NCBI RefSeq assembly: GCF_964213995.1
Contig: NW_027590123.1
Span: 1,054,001-1,118,000, forward strand
Direction: 5' to 3'
DNA length: 64,000 bases
Source of the DNA: Mustelus asterias
Lineage: Eukaryota
The notes under the pieces were generated by a model. It saw nothing but the letters and a program-made list of their open reading frames with translations. It was not told where the DNA came from and did not search any database. The stretch's first letter is position 1. Each line of letters opens with the position of its first letter. Below, piece by piece: positions 10,114 to 11,451 of the stretch. The translations under genes were made by a program, and so were the position numbers.

Positions 10114-10136
10114 TGTTTCAATTTGCAAATGCAGAT

Positions 10137-10438
10137 TGTTAAAAAATACTTTTTCAATTCTATCAAATCAAGTCCAATTCATGGTCTCAACAAGTTGAGA
10201 AATTTCCGATCCAAGCTGACAAGACAAGGCCTTCACTCCTGTCTTGCGCCTGACCTACATGAGCCAAGCTAATTGGAGTAGGTGCAGACTCACCTCCTCC
10301 AAGGCCTTTGCATCTTAGCCAAAAGGCCGATATGCCACTTTTAAAAATTGCTTCAAATGAAGCTTAAATGTAACCTAATGACCAAGCGCAGCATCCGATC
10401 CATACGACACTTGATTTTAGCCAAAGGGCCGAGAAGCC
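10137..10438 (-). mobile_element. U2 snRNA-headed SINE-like element, copy 1
   Basis: Minus-strand 5' end GCTTCTCGGCCCTTTGGCTAAAATCAAGTGTCGTAT (U2 nt 4-39, 3 mismatches) followed by a non-U2 structured body. Flanked by TTTGCAA(A/G)T(G/A)CAGAT repeats. Confidence 0.75.
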
Positions 10439-10454
10439 TTTTGCAAGTACAGAT

Positions 10455-10797
10455 TTTTTTTTGATTTTTTTAACATACTTTTCCAATTCAATCAAATCAA
10501 GTCCAATTCAGAGTCTCAACAAGTTGAGACATTTCCGATCCAGGCTGGCAAGACAGGGCAAGCGACCATTTACCCTGTCCTGGGCCCGATCTACATGAGC
10601 CAAGCTGATTGGAGGAGGGAAAGCAATTCCTCCTCCAAGACTTCATCTCTTTTGCATCTGAGCCAAAAGGCCGAGATACCGCTTTTAAAAATTGCTTCAT
10701 ATGAAACATATGAAGCTTCAATGTAACCTAATGACCTCAACCAAGTGCAGCATCCAATCCATACTACACTTGATCTTAGCCAAAAGGCCGAGAAGCC
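10455..10797 (-). mobile_element. U2 snRNA-headed SINE-like element, copy 2, with A-rich tail
   Basis: 10796-10761 reads GCTTCTCGGCCTTTTGGCTAAGATCAAGTGTAGTAT, a perfect match to vertebrate U2 nt 4-39. 3' tail TTAAAAAAATCAAAAAAAAA. Direct repeat TTTGCAAGTACAGAT at 10440-10454 and 10799-10813. Confidence 0.8.
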
Positions 10798-11451
10798 TTT
10801 TGCAAGTACAGATGATTGATATGCTGAAGGGCATTTTGTTTAAATTTGTTACAAAGCACGAATCGAGAAGGCAATTTACCAGCCAGTTCAACGACTATCA
10901 CAATGCACATTGCTGAACGTCTGGCACCAGATGCCTGCAACGTCAATGCTTTTCATATTTTCGCTACTCTTTAACTCCTCCGTTGAAAGAGGGAAGCAGT
11001 TGGTGTCGTACAAGAATAAATTGACTGGAGTTCGGCAAGTGCGTGCGTGCGTAAGTGCGCGCGCGTGTGTGTGTGTGTGTCTGCGTTGTGGTAGAAAAGT
11101 CTCCTGTCTTCGATCAGAGTGCTGCCAATTCTAAGGTGTAACGCACTCTGGCCTCTCGCTCCGACTTCTTGATTAAATTGGGACAGGTGAGTGACTGAAT
11201 GCCACATGTAGGTGGACCCCTTGCCCACTATGGCTTCCCTGCCTTTCAGCGCTGTGTATTCATGAGCAATTGTCCTCTGGGGCTGATGCAATGACGCCAG
11301 GAGAGTCATTCGCTGCATCATCTGCAATGTGACTGCGGTGGAATTTGCTGAAATTTCCCTGTGTTTAGATTACCACTTTTTGCGAATTTAAAATGAAATG
11401 CCCTTCAGCAAACCCAACATCGCTGCAAATAGCAGCTGGATGCTCTGTTGT

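What the first reader, a model, noticed from the sequence alone, without database searches (positions are those of the whole stretch)
10122..10813. U2 snRNA-headed, structured SINE-like element found twice at one site beside a tRNA-Gln gene, with an empty paralogous site
Seen: on the minus strand the layout is [repeat]-element-[repeat]-element-[repeat]-8 bp-tRNA-Gln 3' end. The 15-bp repeat TTTGCAA(G/A)T(A/G)CAGAT is at 10122, 10440 and 10799. The paralogous block has a single copy (24892-24906) and no element, so this is an insertion with target-site duplication. Each element starts with U2 nt 4-39 (perfect in copy 2, including the GUAGUA branch-point pairing sequence), continues with ~270-300 nt of non-U2 sequence, and copy 2 ends in an A-rich tail. 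Known: snRNA-headed SINEs (SINEU) are described from crocodilians, and Tx1-clade Keno elements insert in U2 genes at about nt 37-38, close to where the U2 match stops here. Inference: an independently evolved elasmobranch U2-headed SINE, perhaps born from a U2/Keno-type chimera. I do not know whether this family is already catalogued.
Basis: partly seen in the sequence, partly recalled or inferred. Interest (0 to 1): 0.9.

Follow-up and report, generated by a model that had tools for sequence, protein, structure and literature searches.

The report
U2-headed retroposon inserted twice at one site
Two diverged copies of a short non-coding mobile element that begins with the start of U2 spliceosomal RNA sit at one duplicated 15-bp site beside a tRNA gene, and that site resembles the spot in U2 genes that Keno-type jumping genes cut.

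Summary
On the minus strand, copy 2 (10455-10798) and copy 1 (10137-10439) are separated and flanked by a 15-bp repeat at 10799, 10440 and 10122. The paralogous block has that 15-mer once (24892-24906) and no element. Copy 2 matches the Rfam U2 consensus at positions 4-39 without a mismatch. The body holds only a second U2 stem-loop I, so this is not a U2 gene.

New here: the head stops where Keno and Utopia LINEs split U2 genes. The duplicated site also begins like the U2 sequence just downstream of that split: 11 of 20 positions, a level that 0.58% of the window's 20-mers reach.

Best reading: a SINEU-like retroposon moved by a Keno-type Tx1 LINE into a U2-like pseudo-target, probably twice in succession.

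The scan noted look-alikes before: 35 unchecked first-stage notes on this genome, the eight listed all on other pieces. Eight paper searches found no such family outside crocodilians. The taxon was not verified.

The parts
10799..10813 (-). 15-bp repeat, variant S1 (ATCTGTACTTGCAAA): upstream target duplicate of copy 2. Its last A could also be U2 position 1.
10455..10798 (-). Copy 2 of the element, 344 nt. No ORF of 75 aa or more overlaps the two copies and their repeats (10137-10813).
   Evidence: nhmmer and blastn find only this copy and copy 1 in the window
10761..10796 (-). U2 head of copy 2: Rfam U2 model positions 4-39, 36 of 36 identical to the consensus, including the GUAGUA stretch.
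   Evidence: alignment
10739..10775 (-). 15-bp hairpin in copy 2. The 5' arm (element nt 24-38) is the end of the U2 head and the 3' arm is element nt 46-60. 4 of 15 pairs are G.U.
10657..10676 (-). Second, internal U2 stem-loop I-like piece (U2 model positions 7-26).
   Evidence: 17.4 bits, E 0.18; self-match of element nt 6-26 with 123-143 at 95%
10687..10691 (-). T5 run inside a stretch conserved in both copies (AATTTTTAAAAG). Further T4 runs start at element nt 14 and 131.
10455..10471 (-). A-rich tail of copy 2 (A7-TC-A8).
10440..10454 (-). 15-bp repeat, variant S1, between the two copies.
10137..10439 (-). Copy 1 of the element, 303 nt. It is the older-looking copy: 3 changes in the head and a decayed tail.
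   Evidence: (U2 31.3 bits, below the gathering score of 46)
10122..10136 (-). 15-bp repeat, variant S0 (ATCTGCATTTGCAAA), identical to the empty site.
10041..10114 (+). tRNA-Gln(TTG) gene, tail to tail with the elements, 7-8 bp from the 3' repeat.
24892..24906 (-). Empty paralogous site: a single S0 15-mer and no element.
11525..11539 (-). Third, diverged paralogue of the site, also empty, next to a tRNA-like remnant.

Best explanation
This is a short, non-coding, non-autonomous retroposon of the SINEU kind. The RNA begins with the first 38-39 nt of U2 snRNA, which is the part of a U2 gene upstream of the point where Keno-type (Tx1-clade) LINEs insert. It continues with about 265-305 nt of hairpin-rich sequence that includes an older, second U2 stem-loop I, and it ends in an A-rich tail.

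Shown: it entered a site 7-8 bp from a tRNA-Gln gene and duplicated 15 bp of target, and two paralogous sites are empty.

Inferred:
- A Keno-type LINE endonuclease and reverse transcriptase made the insertion by target-primed reverse transcription. The duplicated target starts like the U2 sequence that follows a Keno insertion, so the site acted as a U2 pseudo-target.
- Copy 1 came first. Its upstream target duplicate then changed at two positions, and copy 2 later landed in that duplicate. This gives element-repeat-element, as described for tandem SINEU-3 insertions.
- The head comes from co-transcription of a source copy with the 5' part of a U2 gene, or from an equivalent U2/Keno chimera. 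RNA polymerase III is unlikely because of the internal T4-T5 runs.
For: - TSD and empty sites.
- U2 head 36 of 36 in copy 2, with the same head/body junction in both copies.
- Only a second stem-loop I in the body, and no support for U2 stem-loops II-IV.
- Keno/Utopia split: U2 downstream of the insert starts at nt 39 and the upstream fragment is nt 1-38 (PMC4640811 section 6). Keno's 3' target is printed in PMC6136364.
- The 20 nt after the tail match that target at 11 of 20 with the first 4 exact, both at the 3' repeat and at the empty site. In the window, 744 of 127,458 20-mers reach 11 or more (0.58%), and 80 of 127,458 also have the first 4 exact.
- Sequential insertion: the two S1 repeats are 15 of 15 identical and copy 2's head is intact, while the copies differ at 44 of 306 aligned positions plus 5 indels. 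The copies (85.5% substitution identity) are no closer to each other than the paralogous flanks are (80.7-85.9% in 6 blocks), although the insertion looks younger than the block duplication.
- Both S0-to-S1 changes move towards the U2 target, from 6 of 9 to 8 of 9.
- Precedent: tandem SINEU-3 copies sandwiching a TSD are read as sequential insertions, and Tx1-Mar, a Keno relative, is named as the mobiliser (PMC4494074 Results).
- T runs at element nt 14, 108 and 131, and no A or B box closer than 2-3 mismatches.
Against: - No other copy could be examined, so family status rests on two linked copies plus unchecked notes.
- The target similarity is a single, partly post hoc comparison, and the S1 repeats score 10 of 20, not more than S0.
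- If Keno also makes a 15-bp duplication in real U2 genes, a co-transcribed head should run past nt 39, and it does not.
- The only Tx1 LINE in the window shares no tail or body with the element and has no U2 at its unit junctions.
- The copy divergence (85.5%) lies within the range of the flanks, so an early tandem duplication is not excluded.
- Taking copy 2's fold as the structure, copy 1 keeps 9 changed pairs and breaks 13. This gives no sign that the copies diverged under selection in separate active lineages.
Confidence: 0.6

Rival explanations
1. There was one insertion only. The second copy arose by unequal crossing-over between the two 15-bp target duplicates (a tandem duplication), and both copies then decayed.
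For: The layout of repeat-element-repeat-element-repeat is what such an exchange gives. Substitution identity of the copies (85.5%) lies within the range of the paralogous flanks (80.7-85.9%). The changes between the copies break pairs as often as they keep them (9 kept, 13 broken), as neutral decay would.
Against: The upstream and middle repeats share two changes against the 3' repeat, so the flanking duplicates had already diverged by 2 of 15 before the exchange. Yet the copies are then as diverged as the whole block duplication that preceded the insertion. Copy 2 has 0 of 36 changes in its head, identical flanking repeats and a clean tail, while copy 1 has 3 of 36 changes and a decayed tail.
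Confidence: 0.3
2. It is a one-off chimeric retropseudogene, not a family. A LINE reverse transcriptase switched template from some cellular RNA to U2 snRNA. Such snRNA chimeras are described for human L1; I know these papers only as cited in the Discussion of PMC4494074.
For: U2 piece at the 5' end, an A-rich tail and a TSD. No second locus was seen with tools.
Against: Both copies share one head/body junction and an internal second U2 stem-loop I, which points to repeated head addition in a propagating lineage. The junction coincides with the Keno site. Unchecked notes report many 331-371-nt look-alikes with their own TSDs on other pieces of the genome.
Confidence: 0.12
3. It is a functional variant U2 snRNA gene, or another snRNA-like gene.
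For: Copy 2 passes the Rfam U2 gathering score (56.4 against 46 bits) and folds far better than shuffles (z -7.87, 0 of 100 shuffles as low).
Against: Without the head, the body matches U2 only at a repeated stem-loop I, and copy 1's body gives no U2 match at all. In the predicted fold of copy 2 the branch-point-pairing stretch is locked in a hairpin. The upstream DNA is the ordinary flank that is also present at the empty paralogue, so no snRNA promoter came with the element.
Confidence: 0.03

Closest known systems
SINEU families of crocodilians, above all SINEU-3 and the U2-headed SINEU-1 subfamilies (Kojima 2015, PMC4494074; Results and Discussion read)
   Same: Short non-coding retroposon, 5' head from U2 snRNA, A tail and TSDs. 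Repeated U2 pieces within one element. Tandem copies that sandwich a TSD at a preferred target. Internal oligo-T that argues against Pol III. A proposed Tx1-clade (Keno-related) mobiliser.
   Different: Different host: the paper found no SINEU outside crocodilians. The target is a U2-like site beside a tRNA gene, not Mariner-N4_AMi. The body is about 300 nt of hairpins and is not known to be related. Sequence homology to SINEU bodies could not be tested.
Keno (Tx1-clade LINE specific for U2 genes) and Utopia, which uses the same site (PMC4640811 section 6; a passage of PMC6136364)
   Same: The element's U2 head stops within 1 nt of their insertion point. The DNA after the element's tail starts like their 3' target (first 4 of 4, and 11 of 20).
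   Different: There is no ORF and the length is about 300-345 nt. It is not inserted in a U2 gene. No Keno sequence was available to compare untranslated regions.
snRNA-headed chimeric retropseudogenes made by L1 template switching (known to me only as cited in the Discussion of PMC4494074)
   Same: snRNA piece at the 5' end, a tail and a TSD.
   Different: Those are independent one-off events with variable junctions. Here two copies share one junction and a second, older U2 piece.
U2 spliceosomal RNA gene (Rfam RF00004)
   Same: First 39 nt; copy 2 scores 56.4 bits over the whole model.
   Different: The score comes from the head. The body alone gives only a stem-loop I repeat. There is no independent match to stem-loops II-IV or to the Sm site.

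Membership tests
SINEU (snRNA-headed SINE) | Short (under 500 bp) non-coding retroposon | tested here: met
   303 and 344 nt. The longest ORF overlapping 10137-10813 is 74 aa, starts with TTG and has no homologue.
SINEU (snRNA-headed SINE) | 5' head derived from U1 or U2 snRNA | tested here: met
   U2 model positions 4-39 are identical in copy 2, with 3 changes in copy 1.
SINEU (snRNA-headed SINE) | 3' poly(A) tail and target-site alterations typical of LINE-mediated insertion | tested here: met
   A7-TC-A8 tail in copy 2, a 15-bp TSD and two empty paralogous sites.
SINEU (snRNA-headed SINE) | Many copies with one shared architecture, i.e. a retrotransposition unit and not independent chimeras | not testable with these tools
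The 20-mer scans gave chance hits in 8 of 8 loci. Unchecked notes report look-alikes elsewhere in the genome.
SINEU (snRNA-headed SINE) | Sequence relationship to the crocodilian SINEU-1, -2 or -3 consensus | not testable with these tools
   No Repbase or Dfam library was available.
Non-autonomous partner or derivative of a Keno-type LINE | Inserted at the Keno site of a U2 gene (between nt 38 and 39) | tested here: not met
   The site lies beside a tRNA-Gln gene. It only resembles the Keno 3' target (11 of 20, first 4 exact).
Non-autonomous partner or derivative of a Keno-type LINE | 5' flank or head equals U2 nt 1-38 | tested here: met
   The head ends at model position 39. Position 39 could equally be the first base of the body.
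Non-autonomous partner or derivative of a Keno-type LINE | Shares 5' or 3' untranslated sequence with the autonomous LINE | not testable with these tools
   No Keno sequence of this genome was in hand. The Tx1 LINE in the window shares nothing beyond 13-17-nt words.
U2 snRNA gene (RF00004) | Stem-loops II-IV and an Sm site in addition to the 5' end | tested here: not met
   A scan of the body alone gives only model positions 7-26 for copy 2 and no U2 match for copy 1.
Pol III SINE (tRNA, 7SL or 5S head) | Internal A and B boxes or a tRNA-like head, with no early T-run terminator | tested here: not met
   No tRNA was called in the element. The best A and B box matches have 2-3 mismatches, and T4-T5 runs start at nt 14, 108 and 131. 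The box consensus motifs were recalled from memory.

The most novel reading that the evidence does not exclude
The family's source copies sit in U2 genes at the Keno site and are transcribed from the U2 gene's own Pol II snRNA promoter. The head would then simply be the co-transcribed 5' target flank. A Keno-type endonuclease then places the copies both in U2 genes and in U2-like pseudo-sites across the genome, stacking them where a site is reused. That would be a second, independent origin of snRNA-headed SINEs in a distant vertebrate. It would also give a concrete answer to the question Kojima (2015) left open, namely how SINEU-type elements are transcribed and acquire their heads.
Probability: 0.3. 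Interest if true: 0.75.

Novelty: new variant of a known kind. Interest (0 to 1): 0.55.

Why it matters
In the literature I could search, snRNA-headed SINEs are known from crocodilians only. Their transcription and the origin of their heads are unresolved (PMC4494074, Discussion). This locus offers two things. First, a clean filled-versus-empty comparison. Second, an element whose head ends at the Keno split of U2 and whose target mimics the sequence after that split, which ties head, mobiliser and target choice into one testable model. If the family is widespread in this genome, it would also be a useful presence/absence marker and an example of a target-specific LINE system spilling onto pseudo-targets.

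Tried and rejected

2. Probe by spurious ORF: the 74-aa ORF of copy 2 found no protein that shares words with it.

4. Scans of public collections with a 20-mer conserved in both copies gave 7 metagenome loci and 1 bacterial MAG locus. In 8 of 8 loci the similarity stops at 20-27 nt, so these are chance hits.

5. Whole-U2 origin: rejected, because the body alone matches only stem-loop I.

6. Tail shared with the Tx1 LINE of the window: rejected. The 17-nt word at 54565-54581 is a chance look-alike in G+C-rich sequence.

7. Selection on stems. The RNAalifold consensus keeps all 81 pairs (9 one-sided changes, 1 compensatory), but it is biased towards compatible pairs. With copy 2's own fold, 9 changed pairs are kept and 13 are broken. 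The result is inconclusive.

8. A fixed-period script for the Tx1 array failed because the units differ in length. BLAST replaced it.

9. Findings look-ups by sequence and by relatives were blank.

10. Literature. Eight searches found no snRNA-headed SINE outside crocodilians and no Keno report for sharks. The 21 papers listed of the 23 that hold SINEU as a whole word were judged from the search listing only. Supplementary files were never requested. The SINEU paper's supplementary target figures may bear on the comparison.

Full report
OBSERVATION. Read on the minus strand, the stretch is repeat (10799-10813), copy 2 (10455-10798, 344 nt), repeat (10440-10454), copy 1 (10137-10439, 303 nt), repeat (10122-10136). 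After 7-8 bp comes the 3' end of a tRNA-Gln(TTG) gene on the other strand. A pattern search finds the 15-mer four times with at most 2 mismatches: the three sites above and 24892-24906. The upstream and middle repeats share the same two changes (variant S1). The 3' repeat equals the 24892 site (variant S0). The 24.9-kb block is a paralogue of this region. 9788-10041 aligns with 24558-24821, and 10799-11031 aligns with 24892-25124 at 81.1% without gaps. The S0 15-mer there is single and no element is present. A third, more diverged paralogue near 11525 is also empty. The paralogous block carries an N run (25129-25269), which I left untouched.

ANATOMY. The two copies align over their whole length, with 262 matches, 44 mismatches and 38 gap columns in 5 indels, which is 85.6% substitution identity. 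BLAST reports 78% when gaps are counted. BLASTN with 7-nt words and an nhmmer profile of the two copies find no further copy in the 64 kb. No ORF overlapping the two copies and their repeats (10137-10813) exceeds 74 aa. Copy 2 ends in A7-TC-A8, and copy 1's tail is decayed.

RELATION TO U2. Rfam calls copy 2 as U2 (56.4 bits, gathering score 46) and copy 1 below threshold (31.3 bits). In the alignment, model positions 4-39 are identical to the consensus in copy 2, including the branch-point-pairing GUAGUA. Copy 1 differs from copy 2 at 3 positions of the head. The apparent full-length match is forced by the head. Scanned without the head, the body of copy 2 matches U2 only at model positions 7-26, a second stem-loop I at 10657-10676 (17.4 bits, E 0.18). 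The body of copy 1 gives no U2 match. So the element is a U2 head, then unrelated sequence, then an older U2 stem-loop I, then more unrelated sequence and a tail. It is not a U2 gene or a full-length U2 pseudogene. Repeated addition of U2 pieces at the 5' end is what Kojima describes for SINEU-1 subfamilies (PMC4494074 Results).

STRUCTURE. Copy 2 folds at -133.6 kcal/mol against -93.9 +/- 5.0 for shuffles (z -7.87, 0 of 100 shuffles as low). Copy 1 folds at -96.6 against -82.6 +/- 4.7 (z -2.95, 1 of 100). In copy 2 the end of the U2 head (element nt 24-38) pairs with nt 46-60 in a 15-bp hairpin with 4 G.U pairs. This sequesters the branch-point-pairing stretch. I tested whether the copies diverged under selection for these stems. 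The RNAalifold consensus keeps all 81 pairs (9 one-sided changes, 1 compensatory, none broken), but it is biased towards compatible pairs. With copy 2's own fold imposed, copy 1 keeps 9 changed pairs and breaks 13. That is no clear signal, so the test is inconclusive.

INSERTION AND TIMING. A filled site with a 15-bp duplication, an A-rich tail and empty paralogues is the signature of LINE-mediated retroposition. Six paralogous flank blocks have 80.7-85.9% substitution identity, and the two copies have 85.5%. If the element arrived after the block duplication, a later tandem duplication should leave the copies closer to each other than the blocks are. They are not clearly closer. In addition, the two S1 repeats are 15 of 15 identical, copy 2's head is 36 of 36 intact and its tail is clean. 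Copy 1, by contrast, has 3 head changes and a decayed tail. The simplest order of events is that copy 1 inserted and its upstream duplicate drifted from S0 to S1. Copy 2, a somewhat different family member, then inserted into S1 and duplicated it. Kojima reads tandem SINEU-3 copies that sandwich a TSD in the same way. Unequal crossing-over between the duplicates remains possible, and I put it at about 0.3.

KENO LINK (new here). According to PMC4640811 (section 6), U2 sequence downstream of Utopia inserts starts at nt 39, the expected upstream fragment is nt 1-38, and Keno has the identical 3' flank. A passage of PMC6136364 prints Keno's 20-nt 3' target. The element's head stops at model position 39, which is within 1 nt of that split. 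The DNA that follows the tail, that is the duplicated target after its first A, matches the printed Keno target at 11 of 20 positions with the first four exact. This holds both at the 3' repeat and at the empty paralogue. Only 744 of 127,458 20-mers of the window reach 11 or more (0.58%), and 80 of 127,458 also have the first four exact. The two S0-to-S1 changes both move towards the U2 bases, from 6 of 9 to 8 of 9 over the first nine positions, although over 20 nt the S1 repeats score 10. Element plus flank therefore imitates a U2 gene split at the Keno site. I infer that a Keno-type Tx1 endonuclease cut a U2-like pseudo-target here. I also infer that the head is the co-transcribed 5' part of a U2 gene, or a U2/Keno chimera. 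The stray TC inside copy 2's tail may be a few bases carried over from an ATC-type target at the source, but this is speculation.

Caveats to the Keno link:
- It is one partly post hoc comparison.
- If Keno also duplicates 15 bp in real U2 genes, a co-transcribed head should extend beyond nt 39.
- The only Tx1 LINE in the window shares no sequence with the element and has no U2 at its unit junctions. Its units start at 46777, 53841 and 60894, and its ORF2 carries endonuclease and RT domains.

TRANSCRIPTION. T4-T5 runs start at element nt 14, 108 and 131 of copy 2. No A or B box lies closer than 2-3 mismatches (the box motifs are recalled from memory). Kojima uses the same argument against Pol III for SINEU. 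The element lies tail to tail with the tRNA gene, so it is not co-transcribed with it. No expression data could be obtained.

IS IT A FAMILY? I could not test this. Runs that hold the stretch exist: 4 runs of one coded organism hold 0.36-0.58 of the sampled words, and none is on record as RNA. The ORF probe was blank. The 20-mer scans returned 8 loci, all chance matches. The scan's own notebook holds 35 first-stage notes on this genome that mention U2-headed SINE-like elements; the eight listed all lie on other pieces. Further notes on other pieces report:
- single 331-371-nt copies with TSDs and empty sites;
- a tandem stack at one site in a CR1;
- one copy "inserted at a U2-like site";
- a "Keno-like Tx1 LINE carrying a U2 5' cap".
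These notes are unchecked and some may be re-reads of this same locus. I use them as leads only.

KNOWN OR NEW. Kojima (2015) states that no SINEU was found outside crocodilians. A 2017 review mentions snRNA-headed SINEs only in its section on crocodilians and does not list them in its Chondrichthyes section (passages). Eight full-text searches found nothing on a U2-headed SINE or on Keno in sharks. Repbase and Dfam could not be consulted, so prior cataloguing is not excluded. That the genome is a shark is the first readers' statement; I could not verify the taxon.

VERDICT. This is a real, well-delimited retroposed element of the SINEU kind. It adds a mechanistic clue that ties it to Keno-type LINEs. 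Family status and taxon remain open. I rate it a new variant of a known kind, interest 0.55.

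Noticed in passing
window 45191-64000: Tx1-type LINE units on the + strand start at 46777, 53841 and 60894 (spacings 7064 and 7053 bp). 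ORF2 (48820-52713) has endonuclease and RT domains. An inverted internal fragment (45191-46778, 98.3% identical to 51252-52839 on the opposite strand) abuts the first unit head to head. The junctions have neither an A tail nor U2 sequence.
   Followed up: partly
window 53011-53360 and 60064-60413: Arrays of 28-bp tandem repeats (12.5 copies, 85% matches) in the 3' region of each Tx1 unit.
   Followed up: no
window 39529-40602 (+): A 357-aa ORF without interruption that matches the rhodopsin-family 7tm_1 domain (E 2e-15). It is probably an intronless GPCR gene.
   Followed up: no
window 11470-11540 (-): A third, diverged paralogue of the target site next to a tRNA-like remnant that ARAGORN does not call. 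It holds no element.
   Followed up: partly
window 438-1386, 2044-2990, 20792-21441: An inverted repeat pair about 950 bp long (94.7% identical), with a third copy about 18 kb away (about 96%). An ORF of 264 aa inside it has no Pfam match.
   Followed up: no
window 8695-18107 vs 23319-33857: A segmental duplication of a tRNA cluster (Gln, Leu, Glu genes), 80-87% identical in blocks. One copy of the Gln gene is degraded (Rfam 30.2 bits at 24828-24886).
   Followed up: partly
window 10739-10775 (-): The sequence right after the U2 head is an imperfect inverted copy of the head's last 15 nt. All 4 non-Watson-Crick positions are G.U pairs on the sense RNA. This would fit a fold-back origin followed by transitions, and possibly RNA editing of a hairpin intermediate (speculation).
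   Followed up: partly
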